From: Lepidodermella squamata
Lineage: Eukaryota; Animalia; Gastrotricha
Direction of reading: 5' to 3'
Assembly (NCBI GenBank): GCA_047495785.1
Contig: JBLDXI010000127.1
Location: 1-21,163, forward strand
DNA length: 21,163 bases
The notes under the pieces were generated by a model. That model searched no databases. It was not told the DNA's origin and saw only the letters and a list, made by a program, of their open reading frames with translations. Position numbers and translations under genes: made by a program. Position 1 is the stretch's first letter. Every line of letters begins with the position of its first letter. Below, piece after piece: positions 1 to 21,163 of this stretch.

Positions 1-893
1 AATGGGGTCGGCTTGAAATTGCGGAGTTGCTGATGAATCGCGCCGCTAATAAAGAAGCGATAGATGACAAACAGGTAGCTACAAAAATTGCCATTCAAAT
101 ACCGAATTTTGGTTTAAAAGTTCAAAATTATGAAAACAAGAATATGAAATTTTGAAATTAAAATTAAAATATTTTGTCTCCAAGTTCTAAAATTCAAAGT
201 TTTGAAAAATTTCAGTTTTGATAACAAAATTTGATTTGACTATTCTTTTTTAATTTCAAAATTTTTTTACAGACTTTTTCAAATTTTGAAATTTGATTAA
301 ATTTGTGCATTTTCCAGCTTTATCGGCCTCTTCATCTAGCCGCCCGTCATCAACACCCTGACGTAGTCCAGCTATTTCTCGATCGAAGGGCAAACCCGTT
401 CGCCCAGGATGAATACGGTCACACGCCTCTGCACCTCGCAGTTCGCGAGGGCCAAAGTGGGGCCTCCTTGCTCGACGCAAGGCGATGGCGAGAGGCCGAA
501 GTCAAGGCCAAAACGGGGCTAGGCTCGAAAACTATCGAAGACGCGGTAACAGCCGGTCGTTGGGAGATGACTGAAGACATCCTACGCAGTACAATTTTGA
601 ACCAGTCGCCGGAAAAGCGACTCGATGAACCGTCACGGAAACAGAGCTTGGTCATTCACATGTTGCTAGACCATAGCCCGGATTTGCTATGCATCAAAAC
701 GAATAGGTTCGGCCGCACGGTTTTACACGTTGCGGCGCAGGCTGGCCAGTTGATGGCGTGCCAGACTTTGATATCGCGAGGGGCTGATCCGAGAGCTCGC
801 GACAAAATTGGCAAAACGCCGCTCAGACTGGCGTTTGACAACAGCAAATATGATATTGTTAGACTTTTTGTCAAACTCGGAATTCCTCAATAA
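1..893 (+). CDS. Ankyrin-repeat protein, 3' part (5' end outside window); exons <1-74 and 318-893
   Basis: Exon 3-74 reads WGRLEIAELLMNRAANKEAIDDKQ. A phase-0 GT..AG intron (75-317) joins it in frame to LYRPLHLAA. ANK motifs GHTPLHLAV, GRTVLHVAA and GKTPLRLA follow; stop at 891-893 with overlapping AATAAA. Confidence 0.9.
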
Positions 894-1300
894 AAACGCG
901 ATGATTAATAAATTGGTAGATAACTCAATAAAATAATTAATATTTAATAGTTTATTTTTTTATTAATTATTTTTCATCTCTTTCAAAAATGTTCTAAATT
1001 GGTCGATAATCGCTGAGGAGAAAGGCTATCCGAAAATCAGCCTTAATTGAAATGTAATGGCTCCTGATTGAATAAAGAAAACAAGGAATTATAGCAACGG
1101 TTGTAAAAGTGGGGAGAGTCTTTAGCTTTAGACGGGATGGCTGTTTTTCGAATCTGATCTTGACGAGTGATAAACCTTGAGTCTCAGTGAATTGTTCATT
1201 TTATTGTGTGTTTCACCTTTTTAGATTTCAAGAATGAAAAAATATTCGATTTAAACGTCGAATTTCGCATCTCTGTCTGTTAGGCTCGATTTTTTTTTAA

Positions 1301-1492
1301 AGAAGCTGCTAGAAATGAAAATCTTTATAATGAAGCTTTGTATAATGCTACAACGCGTTACGTTCTACAATCTCAGTATAATTCAAAAGGTGTCTAGCCA
1401 ACTGGTTCAGTGAGAGTACTGAGATTGTAGAACGTAACGCGTTGTAGCATTATACAAGCTTCATTATAAGATTTTCATTTCTAGCAGCTTCT
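1301..1492. repeat. Inverted repeat/hairpin, 78- and 76-bp arms with a 38-bp loop (MITE-like or hairpin RNA)
   Basis: 1301-1378 is the reverse complement of 1417-1492 apart from two extra T in T-runs of the left arm. No clear target-site duplication. Confidence 0.9.
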
Positions 1493-2212
1493 ACAATTAG
1501 AACGGCAAAAATGTGTGTTTTCTTTTGGAAAGTTTCATGCGCTATTTATGTCGTGGGGGTACAATTGACCTTTCGCGGAGACAGCTTTTGTAACTCGACG
1601 AAAATATGATAATATGAGCGCACTAAGTGCCCGAGTTAAGGTTACACCGTTTTGAAGACTAATTTGTGTACTACCTAATTAATGCTACTTGGATCATTTC
1701 CCGACAATAGGCCAGATTCAGGAACGCCCGAAATAATCCGATGATAAATGGTTTCATCGGGACTACTTCAAAACAGCTAGAGAAACAAAAGATCCAGAAA
1801 GAATAGGCAAAAAAATGATCGCAGAACCGCCGAAGCTAAAGGAAACAATGTGCGCGCGTCACATTGTCTCAATCATCAAGTTTATTGACCTAATGTAATC
1901 AAGAGATCGTCATTTTTTGTGGAATCGCAGTAGACCAAATTTTCGGCATTTTACCTGGCTTTTCCCGGACTATTTATTTTTTTGTCAAGTTGCGTGGTTG
2001 ATTATCAATTTTATATTTCGAAATCCCTCTGACCTTAAGATCGGACATACCGCACCATACTTGAGGATGCGGGATCCTGACCTCTGGTTTTAAATCGGCT
2101 GCGTTACTTACTAGAGATCAAACTTTCTTCAACCGTAATATGCTTTATTAAGAAAAAAAAACGCTGAAACATTCATATAAAGCAAAACATTCAGGTGAGA
2201 TCAAAACTGCGG

Positions 2213-2661
2213 TTAAAAGTAATTGCGGTTTTCCACTTTGAAGAAGCAGTTGTTGATCGCATTGTTGACGACGATTAGGCTCAGAATAACGTAAGGCACT
2301 GAAAGCTGAGATATCATCAAATTAGCGGTCTCAGCATACAAATAGTGGAACATGGGGAACAGCAGGGCCGTCGCAGCGACAGCAACGTGCATAGCGTAGA
2401 AGCATATCACTGGCCAGTTGAGCATCATTTTTGCAGTGGCCGCGCATTCATAATACAAACCTAAATAAATATATGCTTAGAGAAGTCAGGTAACTTGTAT
2501 AATGGTTGGCATAAGAGCTAAAAGCAAGAATGAACAATGCTGGTTCAATGTATGCACTATAAAATGTACTACAGAAATGCAATTTAACCTCGGAAAGATT
2601 CCTGGAAGGGTTATAGCTCTTTCGTTGTGGTTATAGGTATTAGGAATGAGGATGAAGGATA
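2213..2661 (-). CDS. Possible small multi-pass membrane protein; terminal exon 2460-2213, upstream exons uncertain
   Basis: Hydrophobic open frame 2458-2213 preceded by an acceptor (TTTATTTAG, ending 2461). An in-frame upstream model needs introns of 32 and 34 bp, shorter than the ~50 bp seen elsewhere. Start codon not identified. Confidence 0.35.
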
Positions 2662-3304
2662 CTAAAATGTGTTATTTGTAACATTTTGACTTCCAAGACA
2701 TGGAATGACACCACTTGGGCTGGCGTGCGACAGAGTTGATCCAGTTAGGACGACAAAAATCCAGTCGAATTAGAGGGTACTACTGGCAACTGCGTCTTAA
2801 CCACACGCAAGTTTGCTTGGAAAAAAACTGATTTCGTGACTGCCTTTCTCCCATCCCCTACGCTTCCCCGCCGCCGTACGCAGCTGGGCACGCTTGAATG
2901 TTTGACTCATCTGAGATTATAAGAGTGTTGTCGCTTGCTCCAGCTTTGGCATACATGTCATGCATATAATTACTACTAGGTATTTGTTTATGAAACCACG
3001 TGCACCGCTGTTGGATCCATTTCACTGTATTCAGATTAAAAAATACCTAGTAAAATACTATTAAAATGCTTTGGACACACCGTCAAGTCTCCCACCATCA
3101 TATTATTCGATGAAACGCTGGCAACCCAGTTTTTGAGCAGCCCAGCTTCTCATGCACATCTGCTGAAGGGTTTTTGCACCTAATTCGGCGAAGCTGTTGT
3201 ACGAAGTAACTGTTAAGTTTGCACGTTCAACGAATTAAGTCATCTGACAACAGAAGTTCGAGACATTTCTTTTATGAATTTATGGAGTGACAATTATCTA
3301 GCAT

Positions 3305-3996
3305 TTATTTGTTCATCAATCCCGCAAGTCTTCGCATTTCTTCCCTTCGACGTGCCAATCGGCGCTTTTTGTTGCGAGCTTTTATAGCTGCGGTGATGGC
3401 GAAATACAGACCCAGCGCAATGATGCGGAATAGGAAGAAGACAGACGTTGCGACCGACGATCCGAAAGCCAAACCATAGTGAACACCGTGAACTGCGAAT
3501 CTAATGCTCACTGCGATCATTGAAACGAAACCGGTGATAGAAGTGAGTAGGGTTGTAAGACCAGAAGTATAAGCAGCTGAAAAAGCTATCATACACTGAG
3601 CGACTGGATAATGAAACTGAACTCACCCTTATACCAAAGCTTGCAATCATCGACCAAACAGATGTAGATTGAAACGAAAGCAGCGACCATGACGTCGACT
3701 AGAATGAACGTAATCGCTATAGCGGCTCCGATTCTGAAGACAGCCAAGAGCATGTCATTCAAAGCATCACCTGAGCCGCCTTCATCCGCTGAGTGATCCA
3801 GAGACTTCGAATCAGCTCGTGGAGCAGAGACCAAAACAAGGATTGCGAAAACAGCTAAGCCGCTAGCTATGAGAAGATCAATCGACTTGGCGATGAAGCA
3901 ATAGATTCGAAACTTTTCACCTTCCTTTCGCTTTGCTTCTTCATCACCATCAGTAGAGCTAGATAGGCTCATCATATCAGCAGTTACGTGAGGCAT
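3305..3996 (-). CDS. Uncharacterised four-transmembrane protein, ~213 aa; exons 3996-3627 and 3576-3305
   Basis: A 50-bp phase-1 GTGAGT..TTTTCAG intron (3626-3577) joins the listed ORFs 3589-4038 and 3305-3592 in frame. Four hydrophobic segments and a basic C-tail. HYGLAF before TM4 loosely recalls claudin/PMP22-type proteins (weak inference). Confidence 0.75.
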
Positions 3997-4074
3997 TTTG
4001 ATAGTTCGAAATGAACCCCATGAAAAAGAAAAACTCAATTTTTTAAAAAATTAAGGCGGACGTTTTATTATTAT

Positions 4075-4412
4075 TCAACATAGATAGGAATCTTCAGTAC
4101 CATCTTGAACGCAAAATTTATAGCATGATAACTGAGCTTGAATGTTAACTCCACCCGCTGTTACAAAGCATGGGCACAGTCCAAATCGGCAGGTGTAGTT
4201 TCGCGTTAGCTTGTCAAAGTTGCACACCCGACCAACTTGATAGCAGTCTGAGCAAGGGCTGGAAAAACGCATTGGTTTTCCTTGATTATAAGCTTTAAAA
4301 ATCTGGCTCACCAATGTCGATGGGAGTTTGTTGGATCACCAAATAATGCATGGCCATAGCAGAAGGTGATTGAAATTATGCTGAGACATACAATATTCCA
4401 GAATACACGCAT
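4075..4412 (-). CDS. Small secreted cysteine-rich peptide, 94 aa; exons 4412-4312 and 4258-4075
   Basis: Signal-peptide-like N-terminus MRVFWNIVCLSIISITFCYG, a 53-bp phase-2 GTGAGC..TTTCCAG intron, 10 Cys in the mature part, and AATAAA just after the stop. Confidence 0.8.
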
Positions 4413-5300
4413 GATTTAAACTTAGTGTGAGTGTAAATAATAAGTTATCGCTCTTTTCGCTTTGTTTCTCTTTACCATTGCTCATGAGTTAAATCTTATC
4501 ACCCATTTATCATTCATGATAGCCTAGATATACAAGCTGGGATAAACTTGTCTCTGAGCAGCGGGATCAGATAACACATGAAAAGCAAAAAGCAATTTCG
4601 GCCCATGATCCGGGGGGAGAGATGGATTTTCGCAAATTGATTTTAATACAAGTTGTCTCAAGGGGCGGAAGATAACCGAGTATTAGCGGGTGCGACCTTA
4701 AGTACGCGTTGCTTATGCCAGCGCGTATATGCGTGTCAAGATTATTGATGCATGACGCATGAATCGTGTGTGACACTAATCAAACTTGTAAGTCGATCAA
4801 TCAGGATGCGGATTACCACGCCCGATGGTCAAAATAGAACTGCTGTATGCGGAAATAGAGCGATGAAAGCTGCATCCGAAGTTCAAGATTCACATTGATC
4901 GATATACATTCGGCCTTTTGACCGGTTTTTTAAACGCCATTGCACAATAAAATCACCGAAATTCGTCAGCGTTCCTTCACACTTTGAAATTATTTCCTGC
5001 GGAACTAGCAGTTAGACTCGGCCCATCGATTTATTTTTCTTCCTCTCCCTCTTGAGAATGCATGCAGTTAACAACATTGTCCTCTGACAGGAACAAAACC
5101 TATAGTCTCAAGTTTTTTGATCCGATAACGATAAGAAGACTGCGTAAAACCACTTTGTAAATGCGTCAGAGCAGCACTTGATCAGCAATTTTCCCTGGAA
5201 TTTTAGAAATAATTAGCCGATGACCTTGCCAAAAGAAGAGCAAATTTTTCTATTAAATTGTCGTCTTTTTAATAGATTTTCTTTCAATTTTTTATAATTA

Positions 5301-6547
5301 ATGGGCTTTCTGACGAATATATCCAGTAAGACGGCAAGTTTCTGCCCGGACGAGGCTAAAACCGACTGTCCTTTCCTAATTTTTCTGGTTCTGTATGGAG
5401 TCCCGATTATGAGTACCCTCGGCATCATCGGGAATGCGCTGAACTTCGTCATCTTGAAAGATTCACGGACTTTCAGATCCCCAACTTACGTATTTTTGAC
5501 CTTTCTTGCCGCAATTCAAATAGTCAACTTGACCGGTCAATTGTCTTTCACAATCCTAAATTGGCACCTAGCCAACTACCCAGAATGGACCCAGCCTATA
5601 TCAGCATACTTTGCATGGCCGCTGGCGTGTTGGGGCAGGACCCAGTCCGTCATTTTTACAGTAGCGTACACTGTCGAACGCTATATCTTCATTACAACGA
5701 ACAAAGCCTCGCAAAGCGACATTGTAGCGCTATTCGAGCAAAGAAAGAGAGCCCGTTACTACTGCTACGTCATAATGGCATTAGTAACTGTGGTAAATCT
5801 CCCGCGAATGGCAATGTTCGTCCTCCAGCCTTCGTTAAGATGCAACGAAAGCGAGGATTATATCGGTTTGGAAGACTATTTATTCTACTATTCATTGATC
5901 CGCTTCATGATTTACAACGTTGGAATATTGCTGGTTTTGATTGTTTTCAACGCGTTACTCATCGCTGCTGTTCACCGCGACTCCTTTCATCGGAAAATGG
6001 GCATTCCATTGCCTAAAAATTGCGCTAATCGACACCAGCATTACCTTACTCTAACTTTGATCCCTGCGACTTGTGCTACTGTTTTAGGAGAGATACCGGT
6101 AAGAAACTAAAAATTTGTTGAACATATTTACAAATTCGCTCATGTTAATAGATGACTATGATAAGTCCTATCAGCCGAATGCTCATATGGGACAGGTTTT
6201 TCGTCGTCGATGAGTCCTTAATGCGAAATGCAACATCCGGTGTTGTGATTCTCCTCTCAATCGAGTACAGCCTCAATTTCTTCATCTACTTTATTGGAAA
6301 CAGGCTGTTTCGGCGGACCCTCTTCCGAAAGTTCACGAAGAACCGAGGAGTGATGAGGAGACCCAGTACGTCAAGCTTCGAATCCCATTTATCAGCCAGC
6401 CACTTCCAGAAAAGACTTGACAGCGTTCTCTTGGAAAGCAGCATCAACGTTGTTTCGCCTAATACTAAATCGAGTGAAGAATCCACGAGTTTTTTCGACG
6501 ATATTAAGACAGACAGTAGTAGTAGAACATGTGGGACTCAAAATTGA
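5301..6547 (+). CDS. GPCR1: rhodopsin-class (class A) invertebrate peptide GPCR, FMRFamide-receptor-like group, 397 aa; exons 5301-6098 and 6152-6547
   Basis: TM1 LGIIGNALN, TM2 YVFLTFLA, TM3 TVERY, TM4 NLPR, TM7 SLNFFIY followed by helix-8 FRRTL. A 53-bp phase-0 GTAAGA..AATAG intron lies in TM6. Confidence 0.92.
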
Positions 6548-6956
6548 TCATGGATGAAATAAAGTGAAAGATGTCCTGCGGAGGATTGTAGTTTGAATTA
6601 GGTGTAACGAATTACACGCTCAATTTGTCTAATATTTCTCAGTTTTGGTGGGAATGCTAATTATGGTTTTTAATTTTTCGAATATTTACAGACCGTCTTG
6701 AAAAGGAAGTTTTCCAGTGCTCTAGATTATCCGCTTTCAAAGAAGATAGACTGCCGTTTCCTGTTTTATTTTCTACGTCCAGGTTTTACCACGCAGCATT
6801 GTGATGCATAATTCTCGCTTGAGTAAACTGATGAATACTAATCTTTATAAGACCACGCTACTACTTTCACCACGCCTGGCGAGAACACAATTGAATTCAA
6901 ATTATCACCACTTGAATAGAACGTTCTCTCCAGTATCTGAAAGTTGATTGTTATCT

Positions 6957-9509
6957 ATGAAATTTGACAATTCCTTTCTACTCGTAATTGCTGTAAAACA
7001 GGTGTGTGCCAGGGAGTTTACTGAGTTCTATGAATCTTCAGCTTTTGCTTCGCAGATTATTTATGCATTAACGGCCTCAGCAAACACTTGCCGTATTCCG
7101 GTGATAGAAAATGCAGTTTTCAGCTCGATTTCGGGCGAAAAGCTCTCTGCAGGTAACAAAGTTGTTTCTGGGACGATTGTCACGATAAAATGTCCAACGG
7201 ATTACCAACCTCGAGGAGCTGTTTGCTATCGGAATAACATCTGGCTACCGCCATTCGAGATATGTAAATCCGAATCTATCCAAGAAATGGTAGACTTTGC
7301 TCTGCTCCTATGATACACAGCTACCGTGTTTAATTTTAAAGGCTCCAGTTGAAGCTTTTTCAGCATGTTCCGGGTTTGTTTGCGCCAACAAAAAATGCAT
7401 ATCTGGCGCGTTCAGGTTAGCAAGAATCGACTTAAAAAAGCATTATACCCTGACATTCCGATAATTAGATGCGACGGCGATGATGACTGTGGTATGAAAA
7501 TTCCTGAAAGTTCCATTTCGTCAATCATTTCCACGCCCAGGTGATGGCAGTGACGAATTGAAATGCGGATCTGCTGAGTTGAACGCAAGTAATTTCTTGA
7601 CTGAAGTATCAACTAATTCGTGTCTGTTTCTTAGAAATGTGGATCCGACAAGTTTCCTTGTTTAGTGAGCAAACAATGCATCGACCGGCAATATGTGTTT
7701 CGTCTTTTAAATAAGCCTTTGAGACCGAGATAACCTTTTTCTTTATAGATGTGACTACGATTCTGACTGCGATGATGCTAGCGATGAAATTGGATGTTTT
7801 GAACGAGTTTTTGTAAGACAATTAAACCTTCGACTATTGGTATTATGATTTGCTTATCTAGGTAACAACCACAACAGCAGCAACAACAAAGAGAGCGCCG
7901 ATTTGCAGAGGTTTCACTTGCGCGAATGGTAAGTGCATAAATTCTACGAACGTATGCGATCGGAAGGACGATTGCGGCGACAGTAGCGAAGAGGAAAACT
8001 GCACCCTTACTACGTCGATCGCAAGCACGACCTTGAGAGCAGTAACTACGGTATTTAATTCGCTTATACTTATGATTATATGAATAACTTTTGAGTAATT
8101 TTAGCTACCCTCAAGGGCAGCAAATCGATGCTCAAATTTTGAATTCCAATGCGCGAATTCGAAATGCGTATCGATACTATACAGGTGAGGATTAAAGTTT
8201 TGATTTTTTCCCGGCAATTCTTAAAAAATTACTTAGATGCGATTCAGAAAACGATTGCGGAGACAACTCTGACGAAATAGGTTGCGCGGCCGAGGCCCGT
8301 CAGGTTACATTTTCAACCGCGCTGTAGATGACCAATTCATTTTCCCCATGCAGCCTCCAATTTGCAATGGATTTCGTTGCCGGTCCAGTGGCAAATGCAT
8401 ACAAAGGTTTAATCTCTGAAGTGCATTCTCTTTACATTCTGAAACTCTTCTGTTCTCTTAGCCCTTGGGTTTGCGACGGGGAGGGTTTGTTAAATTTGTA
8501 TTCACAAGTTCCTTTTTAACTTGGATCTTTCAAGAGGACTGCCCCGATGGGTCGGACGAGACAAACTGTCAAGCCACTACGACTAGATCGCGAACAGCGG
8601 CTAGAATGAGACCAACCACTCGGCAGCCTGGTCAAACAACGGTAACCCCGACATCATCCTGGAATTCAAGCCAATGTGGTGTTGTCCATATTCCTCGCAC
8701 GATTTTCGGTGGGTCATTTGCAACTCCGGGCGAATTCCCGTGGGTTGTCAAAATCTACACGAAATTCTCCGGGGCAAGCTCGCTGTCGGGATGTGGAGCA
8801 GCCTTGATATCCAACCAGTGGTTACTAACCGCCGCCCACTGCATAACGGATGACGAAAGAGGTGCCAGAATTGAATGGGTGAAAGCTCTTCTAGGTCGCT
8901 ACGACCTTTCAGCGCGCGATGAAGGCGGCGATGAGAAGAGGTCAACACAGGTTTTTCGACACCCAAACTACGACCAGAGCCGTAACTGGAACTACGACTT
9001 TGCGCTGATCAAACTCAGTTCAGTCGTTAATTTAAATGAAGCGATTCACCCGGTTTGTCTGCCTGATGAAACAAACTGCCAAAGCAGCGTATCTTCGACC
9101 TCAACCTCGATTGATGGCTGCGAGAATGTTGTAGTTGCAGGTTGGGGTAGAACGGAATGTAAGTCTCTACCTCTTCAAGTTTCATCCAATTTTTGAATTT
9201 TAAATCTTAGCTAATACCTCATCCCCCGTACTCAAAATGGCTGAACTGAACATCAATAGCCGTACAGCTTGCAACAGGGCTTACTCCGGTGGGTTATCAG
9301 ACGCTCAACTTTGCGTGGGCAATGGAAGCCCATCGACTTGTACTGGAGACAGCGGAGGACCGTTACTCTGCAAATCCGAGGGCAGAACCAGAGTTATCGG
9401 CGTTGTTTCATGGGGAGCGTCCCGTTGCGGTCTAGGCGGTGCTCCTTCGGTTTTCGCCCGCGTCTGCAGCGTCTTATCCTGGATTAAACAAACCATGGCC
9501 ACGAAATAA
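6957..9509 (+). CDS. SP1: secreted modular S1A serine protease (signal, Sushi/CCP, 5 LDLa, Thr/Arg-rich linker, protease), ~626 aa, 14 exons
   Basis: Exons 6957-7001, 7056-7289, 7342-7415, 7469-7491, 7541-7584, 7635-7696, 7749-7812, 7862-8050, 8105-8184, 8237-8303, 8354-8406, 8462-8484, 8535-9158 and 9211-9509 sum to 1881 nt in frame. Motifs: DCxDxSDE-type LDLa ends, IFGG, TAAHC, DFALIKL, GDSGGP. Confidence 0.9.
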
Positions 9510-9770
9510 TGTTTCTTAAATTGTTTTCAAGAATAAATTAAAGTTCCGGTCCTTTAATCTATTTTGCGGAAACTGCTGTACAGCTTGATATGACAAGTTT
9601 TAGAAGAACATGGATATTCCAATTTCGTGTTCAACTTCCAAGAAAAAAAATCTTTTTATGTGGATGAAAAATCTTCAACACGTATTTTTCACTACGGCGA
9701 ATAAAGTAGTAGTTGTAATGTCATACATGGTAAATTGCCCTGAATAGTGGTTATTGTTTTATTCCTGGCA

Positions 9771-12112
9771 ATGCAACGTGTTTTCATTTGTGTTATTGAT
9801 ATCCTGTTGATTCAGGTTTGGTTATCTTGCCAAATTCAAACGATCCATCATGATTTTTGTGCCCAGCTATCAGTGGGTGCTCGTTATCCATGCAATGGAT
9901 TCGTCTGTTCAAACCAGCGTTGTATAAAAGGAATTCAAAGGTTAGGCTTATCTTACGAATTCAGACTTTTTTCAAATCTTGAATTTATAATCAAGATGTG
10001 ACGGGGCTAATAACTGTGGTTGGCTGCAATTTAGGTGTATTTTGACCTATTTCTCCGATTTTTCACTAGGAGACGGAAGTGATGAACTCAGATGCAGCAT
10101 TCATGTGAGCATATAAATTCAAACTTAACACTCAGCTTACCTCCAATCTGGTTTAGGAATGTGGCGCCGATGAGTTTCCTTGCTTCAGAGGTACCAAATG
10201 TATCAACCGCAAATACGTGTAAGACAAGAATAATCTAGCATGGACTTTTATAATTGCTTGAAAAGGTGCGATTACTACCAGGATTGTCCAGATGGGAGCG
10301 ATGAAGTTGGTTGTTTCGAGCTGAGAGCAGTAGGCGCAGTAGGTTTAACGATCACTAGCAGGCTTTTCAATCCTGAAAATTCAGACAACTCGCAGAACAA
10401 CAACCGAACGACCAGTTTGCAAGGGCTTTTCATGCATGAATGGAGGTTGCATCAATGCTGCTTACGTCTGCGACAATGAAAACGATTGCGGCGACAGCAC
10501 TGATGAGATGAACTGCCGAACTTCGGCTTCCGAGACAACAACTTTGGCCCCCGTTAAAACCACGAGAACAAGAATAGTTAGCTTTCTATTTTTTGTAATT
10601 CGTAACATTTTCAACTACGCTTTCAGCAGACCACTACGTCTACAATGGCGCCATGCTCGATTTATGATTTCCAGTGCAAGAACTTCCGATGCATCTCTTC
10701 CTCGAAAAGGTTAACCGAAAAGATTTGTTTGCGATAAGTCATTCACGTCGTGGATTAGATGTGATTCCTATGATAACTGTGGAGACAACAGCGATGAGAC
10801 GGACTGCCCATCTATGCGTTGGACCACAAGAACAAGGCCAGTCACTTTAATTGCCTCAAATAAAGACACAGTTTGTTGAGCCATATGCACCACTGAATGT
10901 ATTGCATCCGTCTTTTTCCAGGCTTCAATCCCGTATTTATGCTCAATAGAACAATTCAAATGCGATAACTCGAAATGCGTACATCGGAATTTTAGGTCAG
11001 TTACAATTTTATGCTCAACTTCGTAATTATTTCATTAAATAAAGATGCGATGGTGATAACGATTGTGGAGACCATTCGGATGAGCAAAACTGTGGCCAGG
11101 TTCATTATCTTACAACAAGGAGTTTTGAGATTAAAAGAAATTCATAGATGGTCTGTGACGGCTTTCGCTGTACTTCAAATGGCCTCTGTATTCGCAAGTA
11201 AGTGTCCCCTTACTTAATTGGCCTTCCTAACGTATCATACTTATTAGATCTTGGGTTTGTGATGGTGACGGTTTGTTGTCTTGTAGATGCATAGGCCTGG
11301 CTCTATTTTGAGCTTATAAAAGGGGACTGCCCCGATTCCTCCGATGAGCGAAGTTGCAACCGAGTGTATGAATCGGATACAACTCGACGAACCACAACCA
11401 GCACCACACGAACGACTACTACGCAGACTAGCACTACCGAGCATACTACAACAACCAGACGAACTACAACTAGAAAACCCCCCACAACATCATCTGAAAG
11501 ACTTACTTCAACGATATCGTCGCAACCTAATGACCAATGCGGTACTACGGCGTTAAATCCAATCTATGGAGGGACCATTGCTAACCACGGCGACTTCCCT
11601 TGGGTAGTCAAAACTTACACCAAATTCTATGGCTCCGATTTGATGATTGGTTGCGGGGCGGCCCTCATTTCAGACCAATGGCTGCTGACAGCCGCCCATT
11701 GCATCACCGACAGAGTGAGGGACGCCCGGGTTGAATATGTCAGAGCTCTCATCGGCCGGCATGACCTCTCGCTTGGCGACGAAGGTGGGTATGACGTTCG
11801 AATCGAATCAGGTTTTCCGTCATCCAAGCTACGATGTCAAAAGATAACTGGAATCATGATTTTGCTCTGGTGAAGCTGAGCGCTCCTGTCATATTTCAGT
11901 CATTTATACAGCCCATCTGCCTGCCTGAAGCATCTACATGCCAGAGCACCATTTCGCCTACGGCTGACGTCTATCGATGGTTGTGAAAGAGTGATGGTTG
12001 CCGGATGGGGAAGGGACGGAGTTTGTAAGTTGAGCCTGAAATAAAAATCATCCGTTTGAACTCGCTATCTCATTTCGCAGCGAGTTACGACTCCGATGTG
12101 TTGCGAATGGCC
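9771..12112 (+). pseudogene. SP2 left-arm copy, frameshifted from ~11801 and truncated in its last exon (lacks the catalytic Ser)
   Basis: Matches the right-arm SP2 up to 11800, then shows six indels and breaks at 12112 after ...DVLRMA, before GDSGGP. May be an assembly artefact rather than a real pseudogene. Confidence 0.8.
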
Positions 12113-12573
12113 AAAATAACACCCAAACATCGCCGTTTTGCAGCATGCCGTTGCCTCGACAGAGCCAAAGTGTCGTTTTGTGAGATTCGATTTCTCGTTA
12201 TGAACACATACCTCTCGAGTGTAAGCGCGCATGTGAGAACAAATGATGTTGTTAATCCCCAAGTAGTAAGTGGCCATGAGATGTAATTCGAAATGAAGCG
12301 CAGCCATTCAACCTCTAAATCGCTTTGCCTGGCGATGATGAACAAGATTTGGCTGATATTATGCACGAGTTGCACAGCAGCCAATGCTGTTAAGTAAACG
12401 TAAGTAGGCGCTTTGAAGATCTTAGAATCTCGCATTATCGAAATGCTGAGTGAATTGTAAAAAAATGCGACAAAGACCAAGGGTGGGATGACATAATAAG
12501 ATATGGAGTCATAATACCCTCTTTGAACAATACAGTTGCTTGAATTGGATGTCTTGAAATCAACTATGGCCAT
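12085..12573 (-). pseudogene. GPCR2: paralogue of GPCR1, truncated in TM4 at the palindrome junction
   Basis: IMRDSKIFKAPTYVYLTALAAVQLV aligns with GPCR1 ILKDSRTFRSPTYVFLTFLAAIQIV, and TLERYVFIT with TVERYIFIT. After RCLGVILAI the frame runs into antisense SP2 sequence (RNTSES-stop). Confidence 0.88.
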
Positions 12574-12962
12574 TTTATTATATATTATTACAACTGCGCT
12601 TCTCTACTGGACGGTTTTTAGTAGATTTCTGTTTTGAATTGATGTGCGCAATCAAGATAGCTCGGTATATTTTTGGATCATCTTTGAACAGAAATCGATT
12701 AGTTTCTCGCCATTGTGTCTCTAATCCATGGAAGAACAGCGCAGACCCTGCTAAATACAGCGGGCGTTTCTAATCCACATCGCGCTGATCCCCAGGAAAC
12801 TACGCCTATTACTTTCGCTAGGCCTGAGGCGGTGCAAATCAACGGTCCTCCGCTATCACCGACACAAGTAGTAGGCCGTCCATCACCTACACAGATTTGA
12901 GCATCGGACAAAGTAATACCAAAGGCGTTGAGACAAGCTTCAGTGCTGTTTACTCTCATTTG
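12113..12962. other. Unique 850-bp spacer (loop) of the palindrome
   Basis: Arm identity stops at 12112/12963. The spacer carries most of the SP2 last exon and the GPCR2 5' part, both on the minus strand. Confidence 0.93.
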
Positions 12963-15299
12963 GGCCATTCGCAACACATCGGAGTCGTAACTCGCTGCGA
13001 AATGAAGATAGCGAGTTCAAACGGATGATTTTTATTTCAGGCTCAACTTACACTCCGTCCTTCCCCATCCGGCAACCATCACTCTTTCACAACCATCGAT
13101 AGACGTAGCCGTAGGCGAAATGGTGCTCTGGCATGTAGATGCTTCAGGCAGGCAGATGGGCTGTATAAATGACTGAAATATGACAGGAGCGCTCAGCTTC
13201 ACCAGAGCAAAATCATGATTCCAGTTATCTTTTACATCGTAGCTTGGATGACGGAAAACCTGATTCGATCGAACGTCATACCCACCTTCGTCGCCAAGCG
13301 AGAGGTCATGCCGGCCGATGAGAGCTCTGACATATTCAACCCGGGCGTCCCTCACTCTGTCGGTGATGCAATGGGCGGCTGTCAGCAGCCATTGGTCTGA
13401 AATGAGGGCCGCCCCGCAACCAATCATCAAATCGGAGCCATAGAATTTGGTGTAAGTTTTGACTACCCAAGGGAAGTCGCCGTGGTTAGCAATGGTCCCT
13501 CCATAGATTGGATTTAACGCCGTAGTACCGCATTGGTCATTAGGTTGCGACGATATCGTTGAAGTAAGTCTTTCAGATGATGTTGTGGGGGGTTTTCTAG
13601 TTGTAGTTCGTCTGGTTGTTGTAGTATGCTCGGTAGTGCTAGTCTGCGTAGTAGTCGTTCGTGTGGTGCTGGTTGTGGTTCGTCGAGTTGTATCCGATTC
13701 ATACACTCGGTTGCAACTTCGCTCATCGGAGGAATCGGGGCAGTCCCCTTTTATAAGCTCAAAATAGAGCCAGGCCTATGCATCTACAAGACAACAAACC
13801 GTCACCATCACAAACCCAAGATCTAATAAGTATGATACGTTAGGAAGGCCAATTAAGTAAGGGGACACTTACTTGCGAATACAGAGGCCATTTGAAGTAC
13901 AGCGAAAGCCGTCACAGACCATCTATGAATTTCTTTTAATCTCAAAACTCCTTGTTGTAAGATAATGAACCTGGCCACAGTTTTGCTCATCCGAATGGTC
14001 TCCACAATCGTTATCACCATCGCATCTTTATTTAATGAAATAATTACGAAGTTGAGCATAAAATTGTAACTGACCTAAAATTCCGATGTACGCATTTCGA
14101 GTTATCGCATTTGAATTGTTCTATTGAGCATAAATACGGGATTGAAGCCTGGAAAAAGACGGATGCAATACATTCAGTGGTGCATATGGCTCAACAAACT
14201 GTGTCTTTATTTGAGGCAATTAAAGTGACTGGCCTTGTTCTTGTGGTCCAACGCATAGATGGGCAGTCCGTCTCATCGCTGTTGTCTCCACAGTTATCAT
14301 AGGAATCACATCTAATCCACGACGTGAATGACTTATCGCAAACAAATCTTTTCGGTTAACCTTTTCGAGGAAGAGATGCATCGGAAGTTCTTGCACTGGA
14401 AATCATAAATCGAGCATGGCGCCATTGTAGACGTAGTGGTCTGCTGAAAGCGTAGTTGAAAATGTTACGAATTACAAAAAATAGAAAGCTAACTATTCTT
14501 GTTCTCGTGGTTTTAACGGGGGCCAAAGTTGTTGTCTCGGAAGCCGAAGTTCGGCAGTTCATCTCATCAGTGCTGTCGCCGCAATCGTTTTCATTGTCGC
14601 AGACGTAAGCAGCATTGATGCAACCTCCATTCATGCATGAAAAGCCCTTGCAAACTGGTCGTTCGGTTGTTGTTCTGCGAGTTGTCTGAATTTTCAGGAT
14701 TGAAAAGCCTGCTAGTGATCGTTAAACCTACTGCGCCTACTGCTCTCAGCTCGAAACAACCAACTTCATCGCTCCCATCTGGACAATCCTGGTAGTAATC
14801 GCACCTTTTCAAGCAATTATAAAAGTCCATGCTAGATTATTCTTGTCTTACACGTATTTGCGGTTGATACATTTGGTACCTCTGAAGCAAGGAAACTCAT
14901 CGGCGCCACATTCCTAAACCAGATTGGAGGTAAGCTGAGTGTTAAGTTTGAATTTATATGCTCACATGAATGCTGCATCTGAGTTCATCACTTCCGTCTC
15001 CTAGTGAAAAATCGGAGAAATAGGTCAAAATACACCTAAATTGCAGCCAACCACAGTTATTAGCCCCGTCACATCTTGATTATAAATTCAAGATTTGAAA
15101 AAAGTCTGAATTCGTAAGATAAGCCTAACCTTTGAATTCCTTTTATACAACGCTGGTTTGAACAGACGAATCCATTGCATGGATAACGAGCACCCACTGA
15201 TAGCTGGGCACAAAAATCATGATGGATCGTTTGAATTTGGCAAGATAACCAAACCTGAATCAACAGGATATCAATAACACAAATGAAAACACGTTGCAT
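12699..15299 (-). CDS. SP2 intact copy: secreted modular S1A serine protease (signal, 6 LDLa, Thr-rich mucin-like linker, protease), ~627 aa, 15 exons
   Basis: The 13 upstream exons mirror 9771-11270, followed by 13747-13052 and 12994-12699; total 1884 nt in frame. Motifs: IYGG, TAAHC, DFALVKL, GDSGGP. Confidence 0.9.
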
Positions 15300-15560
15300 T
15301 GCCAGGAATAAAACAATAACCACTATTCAGGGCAATTTACCATGTATGACATTACAACTACTACTTTATTCGCCGTAGTGAAAAATACGTGTTGAAGATT
15401 TTTCATCCACATAAAAAGATTTTTTTTCTTGGAAGTTGAACACGAAATTGGAATATCCATGTTCTTCTAAAACTTGTCATATCAAGCTGTACAGCAGTTT
15501 CCGCAAAATAGATTAAAGGACCGGAACTTTAATTTATTCTTGAAAACAATTTAAGAAACA

Positions 15561-18113
15561 TTATTTCGTGGCCATGGTTTGTTTAATCCAGGATAAGACG
15601 CTGCAGACGCGGGCGAAAACCGAAGGAGCACCGCCTAGACCGCAACGGGACGCTCCCCATGAAACAACGCCGATAACTCTGGTTCTGCCCTCGGATTTGC
15701 AGAGTAACGGTCCTCCGCTGTCTCCAGTACAAGTCGATGGGCTTCCATTGCCCACGCAAAGTTGAGCGTCTGATAACCCACCGGAGTAAGCCCTGTTGCA
15801 AGCTGTACGGCTATTGATGTTCAGTTCAGCCATTTTGAGTACGGGGGATGAGGTATTAGCTAAGATTTAAAATTCAAAAATTGGATGAAACTTGAAGAGG
15901 TAGAGACTTACATTCCGTTCTACCCCAACCTGCAACTACAACATTCTCGCAGCCATCAATCGAGGTTGAGGTCGAAGATACGCTGCTTTGGCAGTTTGTT
16001 TCATCAGGCAGACAAACCGGGTGAATCGCTTCATTTAAATTAACGACTGAACTGAGTTTGATCAGCGCAAAGTCGTAGTTCCAGTTACGGCTCTGGTCGT
16101 AGTTTGGGTGTCGAAAAACCTGTGTTGACCTCTTCTCATCGCCGCCTTCATCGCGCGCTGAAAGGTCGTAGCGACCTAGAAGAGCTTTCACCCATTCAAT
16201 TCTGGCACCTCTTTCGTCATCCGTTATGCAGTGGGCGGCGGTTAGTAACCACTGGTTGGATATCAAGGCTGCTCCACATCCCGACAGCGAGCTTGCCCCG
16301 GAGAATTTCGTGTAGATTTTGACAACCCACGGGAATTCGCCCGGAGTTGCAAATGACCCACCGAAAATCGTGCGAGGAATATGGACAACACCACATTGGC
16401 TTGAATTCCAGGATGATGTCGGGGTTACCGTTGTTTGACCAGGCTGCCGAGTGGTTGGTCTCATTCTAGCCGCTGTTCGCGATCTAGTCGTAGTGGCTTG
16501 ACAGTTTGTCTCGTCCGACCCATCGGGGCAGTCCTCTTGAAAGATCCAAGTTAAAAAGGAACTTGTGAATACAAATTTAACAAACCCTCCCCGTCGCAAA
16601 CCCAAGGGCTAAGAGAACAGAAGAGTTTCAGAATGTAAAGAGAATGCACTTCAGAGATTAAACCTTTGTATGCATTTGCCACTGGACCGGCAACGAAATC
16701 CATTGCAAATTGGAGGCTGCATGGGGAAAATGAATTGGTCATCTACAGCGCGGTTGAAAATGTAACCTGACGGGCCTCGGCCGCGCAACCTATTTCGTCA
16801 GAGTTGTCTCCGCAATCGTTTTCTGAATCGCATCTAAGTAATTTTTTAAGAATTGCCGGGAAAAAATCAAAACTTTAATCCTCACCTGTATAGTATCGAT
16901 ACGCATTTCGAATTCGCGCATTGGAATTCAAAATTTGAGCATCGATTTGCTGCCCTTGAGGGTAGCTAAAATTACTCAAAAGTTATTCATATAATCATAA
17001 GTATAAGCGAATTAAATACCGTAGTTACTGCTCTCAAGGTCGTGCTTGCGATCGACGTAGTAAGGGTGCAGTTTTCCTCTTCGCTACTGTCGCCGCAATC
17101 GTCCTTCCGATCGCATACGTTCGTAGAATTTATGCACTTACCATTCGCGCAAGTGAAACCTCTGCAAATCGGCGCTCTCTTTGTTGTTGCTGCTGTTGTG
17201 GTTGTTACCTAGATAAGCAAATCATAATACCAATAGTCGAAGGTTTAATTGTCTTACAAAAACTCGTTCAAAACATCCAATTTCATCGCTAGCATCATCG
17301 CAGTCAGAATCGTAGTCACATCTATAAAGAAAAAGGTTATCTCGGTCTCAAAGGCTTATTTAAAAGACGAAACACATATTGCCGGTCGATGCATTGTTTG
17401 CTCACTAAACAAGGAAACTTGTCGGATCCACATTTCTAAGAAACAGACACGAATTAGTTGATACTTCAGTCAAGAAATTACTTGCGTTCAACTCAGCAGA
17501 TCCGCATTTAAATTCGTCACTGCCATCACCTGGGCGTGGAAATGATTGACGAAATGGAACTTTCAGGAATTTTCATACCACAGTCATCATCGCCGTCGCA
17601 TCTAATTATCGGAATGTCAGGGTATAATGCTTTTTTAAGTCGATTCTTGCTAACCTGAACGCGCCAGATATGCATTTTTTGTTGGCGCAAACAAACCCGG
17701 AACATGCTGAAAAAGCTTCAACTGGAGCCTTTAAAATTAAACACGGTAGCTGTGTATCATAGGAGCAGAGCAAAGTCTACCATTTCTTGGATAGATTCGG
17801 ATTTACATATCTCGAATGGCGGTAGCCAGATGTTATTCCGATAGCAAACAGCTCCTCGAGGTTGGTAATCCGTTGGACATTTTATCGTGACAATCGTCCC
17901 AGAAACAACTTTGTTACCTGCAGAGAGCTTTTCGCCCGAAATCGAGCTGAAAACTGCATTTTCTATCACCGGAATACGGCAAGTGTTTGCTGAGGCCGTT
18001 AATGCATAAATAATCTGCGAAGCAAAAGCTGAAGATTCATAGAACTCAGTAAACTCCCTGGCACACACCTGTTTTACAGCAATTACGAGTAGAAAGGAAT
18101 TGTCAAATTTCAT
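15561..18113 (-). CDS. SP1 right-arm copy (Sushi + 5 LDLa + serine protease)
   Basis: Mirror of 6957-9509. One noticed substitution, 17510 vs 7560, changes SDELKC to SDEFKC. Confidence 0.9.
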
Positions 18114-18522
18114 AGATAACAATCAACTTTCAGATACTGGAGAGAACGTTCTATTCAAGTGGTGATAATTTGAATTCAATTGTGTTCTCGCCAGGCGTGG
18201 TGAAAGTAGTAGCGTGGTCTTATAAAGATTAGTATTCATCAGTTTACTCAAGCGAGAATTATGCATCACAATGCTGCGTGGTAAAACCTGGACGTAGAAA
18301 ATAAAACAGGAAACGGCAGTCTATCTTCTTTGAAAGCGGATAATCTAGAGCACTGGAAAACTTCCTTTTCAAGACGGTCTGTAAATATTCGAAAAATTAA
18401 AAACCATAATTAGCATTCCCACCAAAACTGAGAAATATTAGACAAATTGAGCGTGTAATTCGTTACACCTAATTCAAACTACAATCCTCCGCAGGACATC
18501 TTTCACTTTATTTCATCCATGA

Positions 18523-19769
18523 TCAATTTTGAGTCCCACATGTTCTACTACTACTGTCTGTCTTAATATCGTCGAAAAAACTCGTGGATTCTTCACTCGA
18601 TTTAGTATTAGGCGAAACAACGTTGATGCTGCTTTCCAAGAGAACGCTGTCAAGTCTTTTCTGGAAGTGGCTGGCTGATAAATGGGATTCGAAGCTTGAC
18701 GTACTGGGTCTCCTCATCACTCCTCGGTTCTTCGTGAACTTTCGGAAGAGGGTCCGCCGAAACAGCCTGTTTCCAATAAAGTAGATGAAGAAATTGAGGC
18801 TGTACTCGATTGAGAGGAGAATCACAACACCGGATGTTGCATTTCGCATTAAGGACTCATCGACGACGAAAAACCTGTCCCATATGAGCATTCGGCTGAT
18901 AGGACTTATCATAGTCATCTATTAACATGAGCGAATTTGTAAATATGTTCAACAAATTTTTAGTTTCTTACCGGTATCTCTCCTAAAACAGTAGCACAAG
19001 TCGCAGGGATCAAAGTTAGAGTAAGGTAATGCTGGTGTCGATTAGCGCAATTTTTAGGCAATGGAATGCCCATTTTCCGATGAAAGGAGTCGCGGTGAAC
19101 AGCAGCGATGAGTAACGCGTTGAAAACAATCAAAACCAGCAATATTCCAACGTTGTAAATCATGAAGCGGATCAATGAATAGTAGAATAAATAGTCTTCC
19201 AAACCGATATAATCCTCGCTTTCGTTGCATCTTAACGAAGGCTGGAGGACGAACATTGCCATTCGCGGGAGATTTACCACAGTTACTAATGCCATTATGA
19301 CGTAGCAGTAGTAACGGGCTCTCTTTCTTTGCTCGAATAGCGCTACAATGTCGCTTTGCGAGGCTTTGTTCGTTGTAATGAAGATATAGCGTTCGACAGT
19401 GTACGCTACTGTAAAAATGACGGACTGGGTCCTGCCCCAACACGCCAGCGGCCATGCAAAGTATGCTGATATAGGCTGGGTCCATTCTGGGTAGTTGGCT
19501 AGGTGCCAATTTAGGATTGTGAAAGACAATTGACCGGTCAAGTTGACTATTTGAATTGCGGCAAGAAAGGTCAAAAATACGTAAGTTGGGGATCTGAAAG
19601 TCCGTGAATCTTTCAAGATGACGAAGTTCAGCGCATTCCCGATGATGCCGAGGGTACTCATAATCGGGACTCCATACAGAACCAGAAAAATTAGGAAAGG
19701 ACAGTCGGTTTTAGCCTCGTCCGGGCAGAAACTTGCCGTCTTACTGGATATATTCGTCAGAAAGCCCAT
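18523..19769 (-). CDS. GPCR1 right-arm copy; exons 19769-18972 and 18918-18523
   Basis: Translations identical to those of 5301-6547. Confidence 0.92.
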
Positions 19770-20657
19770 TAATTATAAAAAATTGAAAGAAAATCTATTA
19801 AAAAGACGACAATTTAATAGAAAAATTTGCTCTTTTTTTGGCAAGGTCATCGGCTAATTATTTCTAAAATTCCAGGGAAAATTGCTGATCAAGTGCTGCT
19901 CTGACGCATTTACAAAGTGGTTTTACGCAGTCTTCTTATCGTTATCGGATCAAAAAACTTGAGACTATAGGTTTTGTTCCTGTCAGAGGACAATGTTGTT
20001 AACTGCATGCATTCTCAAGAGGGAGAGGAAGAAAAATAAATCGATGGGCCGAGTCTAACTGCTAGTTCCGCAGGAAATAATTTCAAAGTGTGAAGGAACG
20101 CTGACGAATTTCGGTGATTTTATTGTGCAATGGCGTTTAAAAAACCGGTCAAAAGGCCGAATGTATATCGATCAATGTGAATCTTGAACTTCGGATGCAG
20201 CTTTCATCGCTCTATTTCCGCATACAGCAGTTCTATTTTGACCATCGGGCGTGGTAATCCGCATCCTGATTGATCGACTTACAAGTTTGATTAGTGTCAC
20301 ACACGATTCATGCGTCATGCATCAATAATCTTGACACGCATATACGCGCTGGCATAAGCAACGCGTACTTAAGGTCGCACCCGCTAATACTCGGTTATCT
20401 TCCGCCCCTTGAGACAACTTGTATTAAAATCAATTTGCGAAAATCCATCTCTCCCCCCGGATCATGGGCCGAAATTGCTTTTTGCTTTTCATGTGTTATC
20501 TGATCCCGCTGCTCAGAGACAAGTTTATCCCAGCTTGTATATCTAGGCTATCATGAATGATAAATGGGTGATAAGATTTAACTCATGAGCAATGGTAAAG
20601 AGAAACAAAGCGAAAAGAGCGATAACTTATTATTTACACTCACACTAAGTTTAAATC

Positions 20658-20995
20658 ATGCGTGTATTCTGGAATATTGTATGTCTCAGCATAATTTCAA
20701 TCACCTTCTGCTATGGCCATGCATTATTTGGTGATCCAACAAACTCCCATCGACATTGGTGAGCCAGATTTTTAAAGCTTATAATCAAGGAAAACCAATG
20801 CGTTTTTCCAGCCCTTGCTCAGACTGCTATCAAGTTGGTCGGGTGTGCAACTTTGACAAGCTAACGCGAAACTACACCTGCCGATTTGGACTGTGCCCAT
20901 GCTTTGTAACAGCGGGTGGAGTTAACATTCAAGCTCAGTTATCTTGCTATAAATTTTGCGTTCAAGATGGTACTGAAGATTCCTATCTATGTTGA
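20658..20995 (+). CDS. Secreted 10-Cys peptide, right-arm copy; exons 20658-20758 and 20812-20995
   Basis: Mirror of 4075-4412 with the same intron and translation. Confidence 0.8.
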
Positions 20996-21076
20996 ATAAT
21001 AATAATAAAACGTCCGCCTTAATTTTTAAAAAAATGGAGTTTTTCTTTTTCATGTGGTTTATTTCGAACTATCAAA

Positions 21077-21163
21077 ATGCCTCACGTAACTGCTGATATG
21101 ATGAGCCTATCGAGCTCTACTGATGGTGATGAAGAAGCAAAGCGAAAGGAAGGTGAAAAGTTT
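21077..21163 (+). CDS. 5' start of the four-TM protein, right-arm copy (runs off window)
   Basis: Reads MPHVTADMMSLSSSTDGDEEAKRKEGEKF; mirror of 3996-3910. Confidence 0.75.
   Translation, partial: MPHVTADMMSLSSSTDGDEEAKRKEGEKF

What the first reader, a model, noticed from the sequence alone, without database searches (positions are those of the whole stretch)
3910..21163. Giant gene-bearing palindrome with arms of at least 8.2 kb and an 850-bp spacer
Seen: about 80% of the window is one inverted duplication covering five genes, with no net indel between 4075 and 11800. Known: such structures form in vivo by fold-back priming, breakage-fusion-bridge cycles or ODIRA-type amplification, and in vitro as phi29/MDA inverted chimeras or fold-back long reads. 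Inference: if real, this is a very young or gene-conversion-homogenised amplification of a protease/GPCR cluster. An artefact is at least as likely.
Basis: partly seen in the sequence, partly recalled or inferred. Interest (0 to 1): 0.85.

Follow-up and report, generated by a model that had tools for sequence, protein, structure and literature searches.

The report
Fold-back chimera, not a genomic palindrome
The 17-kb mirror-image duplication is truly in the assembled sequence, but an independent set of reads shows a normal unduplicated locus, so it is most likely a chimeric long DNA molecule kept by the assembler and not a feature of the animal's genome.

Summary
Arms 3910-12117 and 12958-21163 are 99.8% identical in inverted orientation around an 840-nt spacer.

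The biological reading does not hold. There is only one unnatural junction, at 12107-12117. Arm 2 plus the spacer is a normal, colinear locus. It holds a complete LDLa-trypsin protease, an intergenic stretch and the start of a GPCR gene.

In public run X1, one unbranched 9.9-kb contig (word depth 126) carries the spacer and the arm-2 version. It then leaves the window at 12107 into other sequence. That sequence keeps the GPCR frame open and matches the paralogue's next motif, NLPRM. The window's version stops six codons after the junction.

The arm differences are clustered. Seven events lie within 317 nt of the junction, seven within 217 nt of the outer end, and two in the 7.7 kb between. Six of the seven inner events and the mismatch at 7560 are private to arm 1 in X1; the seventh (12113) was not reported. 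The indels frameshift its protease.

The junction sits in a 6-nt microhomology (ATGGCC/GGCCAT). This matches the inverted chimeras made by strand-displacing amplification (PMC1855051, PMC6218980).

First readers noted many similar 12-21-kb palindromes elsewhere in this assembly, which suggests a systematic artefact. Only contigs were available, so raw-read depth was not tested. Confidence in the artefact reading is about 0.85.

The parts
1..3909 (.). Unique left flank: ankyrin-repeat gene fragment, a 192-nt hairpin, and the body of a small membrane-protein gene. This is the natural continuation of the locus beyond arm 1. Its mirror would lie past the window's right end.
   Evidence: No inverted match in the window. 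Ankyrin Pfam hits for 303-893. The X1 contig runs about 3.4 kb past position 7000 in this direction (record length 9936 against the pieces laid).
3910..12117 (+). Arm 1, the copy that carries private errors. Its inner 317 nt (11801-12117) hold 5 inserted letters in 4 events, 1 deletion and 1 mismatch relative to arm 2. The indels break the reading frame of the second protease.
   Evidence: alignment; the trypsin ORF is 169 aa here against 224 aa in arm 2. tables 3 and 4: X1 lacks every one of these indels and reads T at 7560, as arm 2 does. X2 agrees at 7560 and 11966.
3589..3996 (-). First coding exon of a small membrane-protein gene (ATG near 3996). It crosses the outer edge of arm 1, and its arm-2 copy is cut by the window end.
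   Evidence: Translations. No Pfam family.
5301..6547 (+). GPCR1, a rhodopsin-like 7TM receptor in two exons (arm-2 copy at 18523-19769, minus strand).
   Evidence: ORFs. Weak 7TM Pfam hit. 43% identity to GPCR2.
6948..9509 (+). Protease 1: LDL-receptor class A repeats followed by a complete trypsin domain, with introns of about 50 nt.
   Evidence: Trypsin Pfam hits for 8465-9196 and 9237-9509. LDLa motifs in the spliced translation. GT..AG joints in the RNA-like run X2 (table 5).
9747..12112 (+). Protease 2, arm-1 copy: LDLa repeats plus the N-terminal two thirds of a trypsin domain. It is frameshifted and cut off at the fold-back junction.
   Evidence: Junction sequence.
12107..12117 (.). 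The only unnatural junction. There is a 6-nt exact microhomology, ATGGCC (12107-12112), whose inverted partner GGCCAT lies at 12963-12968. Allowing one indel, the match is 10 of 11.
   Evidence: three-way comparison of the junction. In one search, the two pieces of the X1 contig overlap on 12107-12117, and the contig's other letters begin before 12107.
12118..12573 (-). GPCR2 N-terminal part (ATG at 12573). In the window it stops six codons past the junction. In run X1 it continues in frame.
   Evidence: X1 gives ...LAITIFNLPRML, against GPCR1 ...VTVVNLPRMAM.
12705..12957 (-). Last exon of protease 2 (trypsin C-terminal third with the GDSGGP motif). It is continuous with arm 2, so the junction 12957/12958 is natural.
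   Evidence: Trypsin profile positions 146-220, E 7.8e-17. X2 spliced contigs join 12117 to 12957 on opposite strands, which is the arm-to-last-exon continuity (table 5).
12958..21163 (-). Arm 2, the copy that agrees with the independent runs. It is colinear with the spacer and carries an intact protease 2 reading frame.

Best explanation
The palindrome is an inverted (fold-back) chimeric DNA molecule. It was formed in vitro, or at most in a rare molecule, and was read as one long read or a few and kept by the assembler as a contig or contig end.

The natural locus, read right to left in the window, is: arm 2 (21163 to 12958), then the last exon of protease 2, then an intergenic stretch, then GPCR2.

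A growing strand copying in that direction reached 12107 inside GPCR2. Its 3' end (GGCCAT) came loose and re-annealed about 850 nt behind, on a strand of its own polarity at 12963-12968. It then copied back out through the same 8.2 kb and 3.9 kb further. This gives window 12112 down to 1.

Shown here: the single novel junction, its microhomology, its absence from the dominant DNA of run X1, and the private errors of arm 1.

Inferred: that the switch happened during library amplification or preparation rather than in a cell. Also inferred: that the errors remain next to the junction and the window end because the consensus there rests on very few reads and polishing reads prefer the true copy.
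For: (1) Only one of the two arm/spacer junctions is unnatural. Arm 2 plus 12705-12957 encodes a complete trypsin domain, and spliced X2 contigs join them (table 5). At 12107-12117 both the arm-1 protease and GPCR2 are cut.

(2) In run X1, one 9936-nt contig with word depth 126 runs as follows: 613 nt of other sequence, then 12107-12957, then the arm. It does not break or branch at the junction (tables 7 and 8). Its 30 reported letters before 12107 keep the GPCR2 frame open and give NLPRM, the motif that follows at the same place in the paralogue GPCR1.

(3) X1 shows the arm-2 state at 7560 and at the six indel events 11801-12069. X2 does so at 7560 and 11966 (tables 3 and 4). The arm-1 indels frameshift the protease.

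(4) Of 16 difference events, 7 lie within 317 nt of the junction (binomial P about 1e-6) and 7 within 217 nt of the outer end. Only 2 lie in the 7.7 kb between. That is a consensus-quality pattern, not a divergence pattern.

(5) X1 holds 0.93 of the sampled 31-mers. About 4.6% of the words are specific to arm-1 errors and the junction, so the shortfall is of that order.

(6) The geometry is inverted, intramolecular, with an 850-nt single-copy segment and a 6-nt priming homology. This matches the predominant chimera class of multiple displacement amplification: more than 85% inverted with intervening deletions, and 2-21 nt complementarity in over 70% of junctions (PMC1855051). Such molecules are known to create false inverted duplications in long-read assemblies (PMC6218980, PMC13265396).

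(7) First readers logged many palindromes of 12-21 kb, roughly long-read size, in the same assembly. Two of those notes mention a PacBio barcode. These notes are unchecked leads only.
Against: Only contigs of the runs were available, and contigs drop rare variants, so they show that the normal locus dominates, not that the junction is wholly absent. Depth on arms versus spacer could not be measured.

I do not know whether X1 is the sample used for the assembly, or what library chemistry was used, so amplification is inferred. I do not know that the window is a whole contig or a contig end.

The outer cluster of differences (3961-4126 / 20944-21112) was not covered by the reads laid, so which arm is wrong there is unknown. 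Fold-back inversions formed in cells have the same geometry and the same kind of microhomology.
Confidence: 0.85

Rival explanations
1. A real germline palindromic duplication (fold-back priming, breakage-fusion-bridge or ODIRA-like). It would be fixed or heterozygous in the assembled individual, very young or homogenised by gene conversion between the arms. Run X1 would then come from a lineage that lacks it.
For: Arms are 99.8% identical, with a short inverted microhomology at the centre, as in cellular fold-back inversions. Many palindromes are reported in the same assembly.
Against: The X1 contig is letter-for-letter the arm-2/spacer version over about 6 kb. It is therefore the same or a near-identical lineage, yet it passes the junction unbranched into an intact GPCR2. 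The differences are insertion-type single-base events that frameshift one copy and are packed next to the junction, while 7.7 kb is almost identical. The older RNA-like run X2 also carries the arm-2 states.
Confidence: 0.05
2. A real but rare fold-back molecule made in the animal, such as a somatic rearrangement or an extrachromosomal amplicon. It would have been sampled by chance as one long read.
For: Contigs cannot exclude rare variants (tool note). The geometry and microhomology are the same as for replication-based template switching in cells.
Against: Nothing distinguishes it from an in-vitro chimera. A rare molecule is not a feature of the genome. The many similar read-sized palindromes across unrelated loci noted by first readers fit a library-wide process better (unchecked).
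Confidence: 0.07
3. A read with a missed SMRTbell hairpin adapter (forward strand, adapter, reverse strand), or a purely computational mis-join by the assembler at an inverted repeat.
For: Both are known sources of palindromic long-read sequence (PMC6218980).
Against: A missed adapter gives arms that meet at the insert end with adapter sequence between them. Here 840-850 nt of ordinary genomic sequence lies between the arms. A 6-nt homology is far too short for an overlap-based mis-join.
Confidence: 0.03

Closest known systems
Inverted chimeras of multiple displacement amplification (Lasken and Stockwell 2007, PMC1855051) and the palindromic long reads and false inverted duplications they cause in assemblies (Warris et al. 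2018, PMC6218980; Vecchi et al. 2026, PMC13265396)
   Same: Inverted orientation. Both parts come from the same small region, with a single-copy segment between them (the 'intervening deletion', 850 nt here). Priming homology is short (6 nt here; 2-21 nt reported). The total size is that of one long read. The junction is absent from the dominant DNA.
   Different: I could not show that the library was amplified. The structure here is a single fold-back, not the multi-inversion reads described for high-gain kits.
   Same: The same geometry: arms in inverted orientation, a short spacer bounded by a short inverted repeat, and one novel junction.
   Different: A real event should be seen in independent reads of the same lineage, should double the depth of the arms, and has no reason to carry clustered single-base insertions beside the junction in one arm only. 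The first point was tested and not met.
Large gene-bearing palindromes kept alike by arm-to-arm gene conversion, such as the human Y-chromosome palindromes P1-P8 (arm lengths 8.7-1450 kb, as cited in PMC6218980)
   Same: Kilobase-scale arms above 99.7% identity that carry genes, with a unique spacer.
   Different: Those are supported by many reads and by doubled depth, and both gene copies are intact. Here one copy of protease 2 and GPCR2 are cut and frameshifted, and the junction is missing from run X1.

Membership tests
In-vitro inverted (fold-back) chimera of strand-displacing amplification | Two segments of the same locus joined in inverted orientation, with a nearby segment present once between them | tested here: met
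   Arms 3910-12117 / 12958-21163 with an 840-850-nt single-copy spacer
In-vitro inverted (fold-back) chimera of strand-displacing amplification | Short complementarity (2-21 nt) where the 3' end primed on the new template | tested here: met
   ATGGCC at 12107-12112 and GGCCAT at 12963-12968. The X1 sequence before 12107 differs from arm 1.
In-vitro inverted (fold-back) chimera of strand-displacing amplification | The junction is absent from the bulk of the organism's DNA, and the normal locus is continuous through the breakpoint | tested here: met
   One unbranched X1 contig, word depth 126, runs from the arm through the spacer into 613 nt of other sequence that continues GPCR2 in frame. Caveat: contigs cannot exclude rare molecules.
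In-vitro inverted (fold-back) chimera of strand-displacing amplification | The library was made by whole-genome or long-range amplification, and the contig is supported by one or very few reads | not testable with these tools
   Run records are coded and kept as contigs, and no raw reads of the assembly were available
Real genomic palindrome or fold-back inversion duplication | Junction present in independent reads of the same lineage | tested here: not met
   The X1 contig lacks it and is otherwise identical to arm 2 plus spacer
Real genomic palindrome or fold-back inversion duplication | Arms at twice the depth of the spacer and flanks | not testable with these tools
   Runs are kept as contigs, so depth is one figure per contig
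Real genomic palindrome or fold-back inversion duplication | Differences between arms look like mutations: spread along the arms, or graded by gene conversion | tested here: not met
   14 of 16 events lie in the terminal 317 and 217 nt. The inner ones are mostly single-base insertions private to arm 1.
Palindromic read from a missed SMRTbell adapter | Arms meet at the insert end with adapter sequence, and no genomic spacer | tested here: not met
   There is an 840-nt genomic spacer encoding real exons.

The most novel reading that the evidence does not exclude
The fold-back is a real molecule made in the animal. It would be a rare somatic or extrachromosomal palindromic amplicon formed by replication template switching at a 6-nt inverted repeat. 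The many read-sized palindromes noted across this assembly would then reflect a genome-wide tendency of this small-genome animal to form such amplicons.
Probability: 0.07. Interest if true: 0.55.

Novelty: not a real feature. Interest (0 to 1): 0.08.

Why it matters
Its value is as quality control. If taken at face value, this window would add false copies of a GPCR and two LDLa-trypsin proteases, a false truncated GPCR2 and a false pseudogenised protease to the gene set. It would also suggest palindrome-driven gene amplification in an animal lineage where such claims attract attention.

First readers flagged dozens of similar 12-21-kb palindromes in the same assembly. The signature found here could be used to screen them together:
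- one unnatural junction in a microhomology
- errors packed beside the junction and the contig end
- the normal locus continuous in an independent run

If the palindrome were real, it would be a very young gene-bearing fold-back duplication. That would be interesting, but it would not be a new kind of event.

Tried and rejected
1. I tried to fetch an independent copy of the locus through proteins. The search for homologous proteins with the arm-2 trypsin ORF gave nothing above 39% identity. The exact-sequence look-up of the GPCR1 exon found no record. The organism is therefore not in that collection at these lengths. Full-length LDLa-trypsin products would fall outside the length filter, so this blank is weak.

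There were no matches. The missed-adapter model is rejected mainly because of the genomic spacer.

3. I looked for the true locus elsewhere in the same genome through earlier notes, by sequence.

4. I tried to use coding potential to decide which arm is wrong at the outer end. All differences there are upstream of the ATG or synonymous, so there is no verdict.

5. Depth comparison of arms and spacer was not possible, because all three runs are contigs.

6. The organism was not identified. It is an animal with introns of about 50 nt and, according to earlier notes, spliced-leader trans-splicing.

Full report
**Observation**

A self-comparison of the window confirms one large inverted duplication. 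Positions 3910-12117 match the reverse complement of 12958-21163 at 99.77% over 8212 columns, with 9 mismatches and 7 gap openings. A gapless core of 7737 nt spans 4065-11801 / 13269-21005. The spacer is 12118-12957. Arm 2 ends only because the window ends. Base composition is even along the window.

**Anatomy**

Each arm carries four recognisable genes:
- the first exon of a small membrane-protein gene (ATG near 3996, minus strand in arm 1)
- a rhodopsin-like receptor, GPCR1 (5301-6547)
- protease 1, with LDL-receptor class A repeats followed by a trypsin domain (6948-9509)
- protease 2, of the same kind (from about 9747)

Introns are about 50 nt with GT..AG ends, as shown by spliced contigs of the RNA-like run X2 (table 5).

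The spacer is not neutral filler. Its right part (12705-12957, minus strand) is the last exon of protease 2, covering trypsin profile positions 146-220 with the GDSGGP motif. It is continuous with arm 2. Its left part (12573 down to 12118, minus strand) is the N-terminal part of a second receptor, GPCR2, which is 43% identical to GPCR1.

So arm 2 plus the spacer reads as an ordinary, colinear piece of genome. The structure has one unnatural junction, at 12107-12117. There the arm-1 copy of protease 2 and GPCR2 are both cut.

**The differences between the arms**

The alignment gives 16 events:
- Seven lie at 11801-12113, the last 317 nt before the junction.
- Seven lie at 3961-4126, within 217 nt of the arm's outer end, which is the window's right end.
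- Two lie in the 7.7 kb between.

Under an even spread, seven or more of 16 events in either terminal zone has a probability of 1e-6 or less.

The inner events are four insertions (five letters), one deletion and one mismatch in arm 1 relative to arm 2. Most are not in homopolymers. They shorten the trypsin ORF from 224 aa in arm 2 to 169 aa in arm 1. A duplication young enough to have two changes in 7.7 kb would not have gathered six frameshifting indels in 300 nt by ordinary mutation. This is what a poorly supported consensus looks like.

**Independent reads**

One search for public runs found three:
- X1 (2024) holds 0.93 of the sampled words.
- X2 (2015, RNA-like) holds 0.30.
- X3 is an unrelated organism from X1's study.

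All three are kept as contigs. I laid them on 7000-12957, which is arm 1 plus the spacer. I left arm 2 out so that the stretch held no long repeat.

X1 gave a single 9936-nt contig with word depth 126. Its letters 1465-6577 lie on 12117 down to 7000 on the minus strand. Its letters 614-1464 lie on 12107-12957 on the plus strand. Its first 613 letters lie on nothing in the stretch.

Read in one direction, the contig is therefore: other sequence, then 12107-12957, then the arm. That is the arm-2 arrangement. It shows no fold-back and no break or branch at the junction.

The same contig lacks the six arm-1 indel events (11801, 11838, 11966, 12015, 12022 with two letters, 12069) and reads T at 7560, as arm 2 does. 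X2 agrees at 7560 and 11966. X2 also joins 12117 to 12957 on opposite strands, which is the protease 2 mRNA running from the arm into its last exon.

About 4.6% of the 31-mers in the searched stretch are specific to arm-1 errors and the junction. This is of the order of the 7% that X1 lacks.

**GPCR2 is intact in X1**

The 30 letters that X1 has before 12107 (table 7) keep the GPCR2 frame open. They extend it as ...CLGVILAITIFNLPRML. GPCR1 has ...CYVIMALVTVVNLPRMAM at the aligned place. The window's version runs into a stop six codons after the junction.

**The junction**

A three-way comparison shows that arm 1 and the arm-2 complement share ...GTTGCGAATGGCC, while the X1 locus and the window share ATGGCCAAAATAACACCC.... 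The switch therefore lies in a 6-nt exact microhomology: ATGGCC at 12107-12112, with its inverted partner GGCCAT at 12963-12968. Allowing one indel, the match is 10 of 11.

**Mechanism**

Read on the complementary strand, a growing strand copied from 21163 leftwards through arm 2 and the spacer to 12107. Its 3' end then re-annealed 850 nt behind, on a strand of its own polarity, and copied back out through the arm and 3.9 kb further.

This is the predominant chimera of multiple displacement amplification. In that study, more than 85% of chimeras were inverted with an intervening deletion, they were mostly intramolecular, and priming used 2-21 nt of complementarity (PMC1855051). Such molecules give palindromic long reads and false inverted duplications in assemblies (PMC6218980; PMC13265396).

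The placing of the residual errors fits this reading. Next to the chimeric junction and next to a contig end, reads or read pairs that extend past the point fit the true copy better, so the false copy keeps its raw-read errors. This step is inference.

**What I could not show**

- I could not show that the library was amplified.
- I could not show how many reads support the contig, or whether the window is a whole contig.
- I could not determine which arm is wrong at the outer end. The differences there are non-coding or synonymous, and the reads laid did not cover them.
- Contigs show that the normal locus dominates in X1. They do not show that no fold-back molecule exists.

Cellular fold-back inversions share the geometry and the microhomology. 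A rare real molecule therefore cannot be excluded, but it would not be a feature of the genome.

**Rivals considered**

- A fixed or heterozygous germline palindrome is contradicted by the unbranched X1 contig, which is otherwise identical to arm 2 and the spacer. It is also contradicted by the error pattern.
- A missed SMRTbell adapter would leave no genomic spacer.
- An assembler mis-join needs far more than 6 nt of overlap.

**Context from the scan**

First readers logged 55 notes mentioning palindromes in this genome. Several describe arms of about 8 kb in windows of 12-21 kb. Two mention a PacBio barcode inside such structures. None of those shown had a follow-up, and I did not test them. 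They are leads suggesting a library-wide artefact. A note on my own window (s1-421519) also points to inverted microhomology at the junction, which I confirm. I read that microhomology as the mark of a template switch, and it does not by itself show an in-vivo origin.

**Verdict**

The structure is most likely (about 0.85) an inverted chimeric long molecule retained in the assembly, not a genomic palindrome. Interest is low, apart from its use as a template for screening the other palindromes of this assembly.

Noticed in passing
window 1301-1492: A 192-nt self-complementary hairpin in the unique left flank. It has nested perfect arm pairs of 25 nt (1301-1325 / 1468-1492) and 41 nt (1338-1378 / 1417-1457). 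It could be a small foldback or MITE-like element, or a structured RNA.
   Followed up: partly
window 6948-9509 and 9747-12112 plus 12705-12957 (minus-strand copy 12705-15380): Two tandem genes encode LDL-receptor class A repeats fused to a trypsin domain. They are flanked on both sides by paralogous rhodopsin-like receptors (GPCR1 and GPCR2, 43% identical). The best database relatives of the protease domain reach only 30-39% identity.
   Followed up: partly
window 7585-7634: RNA-like contigs of run X2 skip a 50-nt intron with GC..AG ends, among neighbours that are all GT..AG and 46-53 nt long.
   Followed up: no
window 3961-4126 versus 20944-21112: This is the second cluster of arm differences: five substitutions, a TAA-unit indel and one further substitution. 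All lie in the promoter, 5' region or a synonymous site of a small membrane-protein gene, within 220 nt of the window's right end. Which arm is correct was not tested.
   Followed up: partly
other pieces of the same genome (earlier notes s1-404935, s1-404937, s1-422744, s1-422699, s1-398308, s1-421500, s1-422908): First readers report many near-perfect palindromes of 12-21 kb in total, and two cases of a PacBio barcode inside such structures. Together with this window, that suggests a systematic fold-back-read artefact in the assembly, worth one batch check.
   Followed up: no
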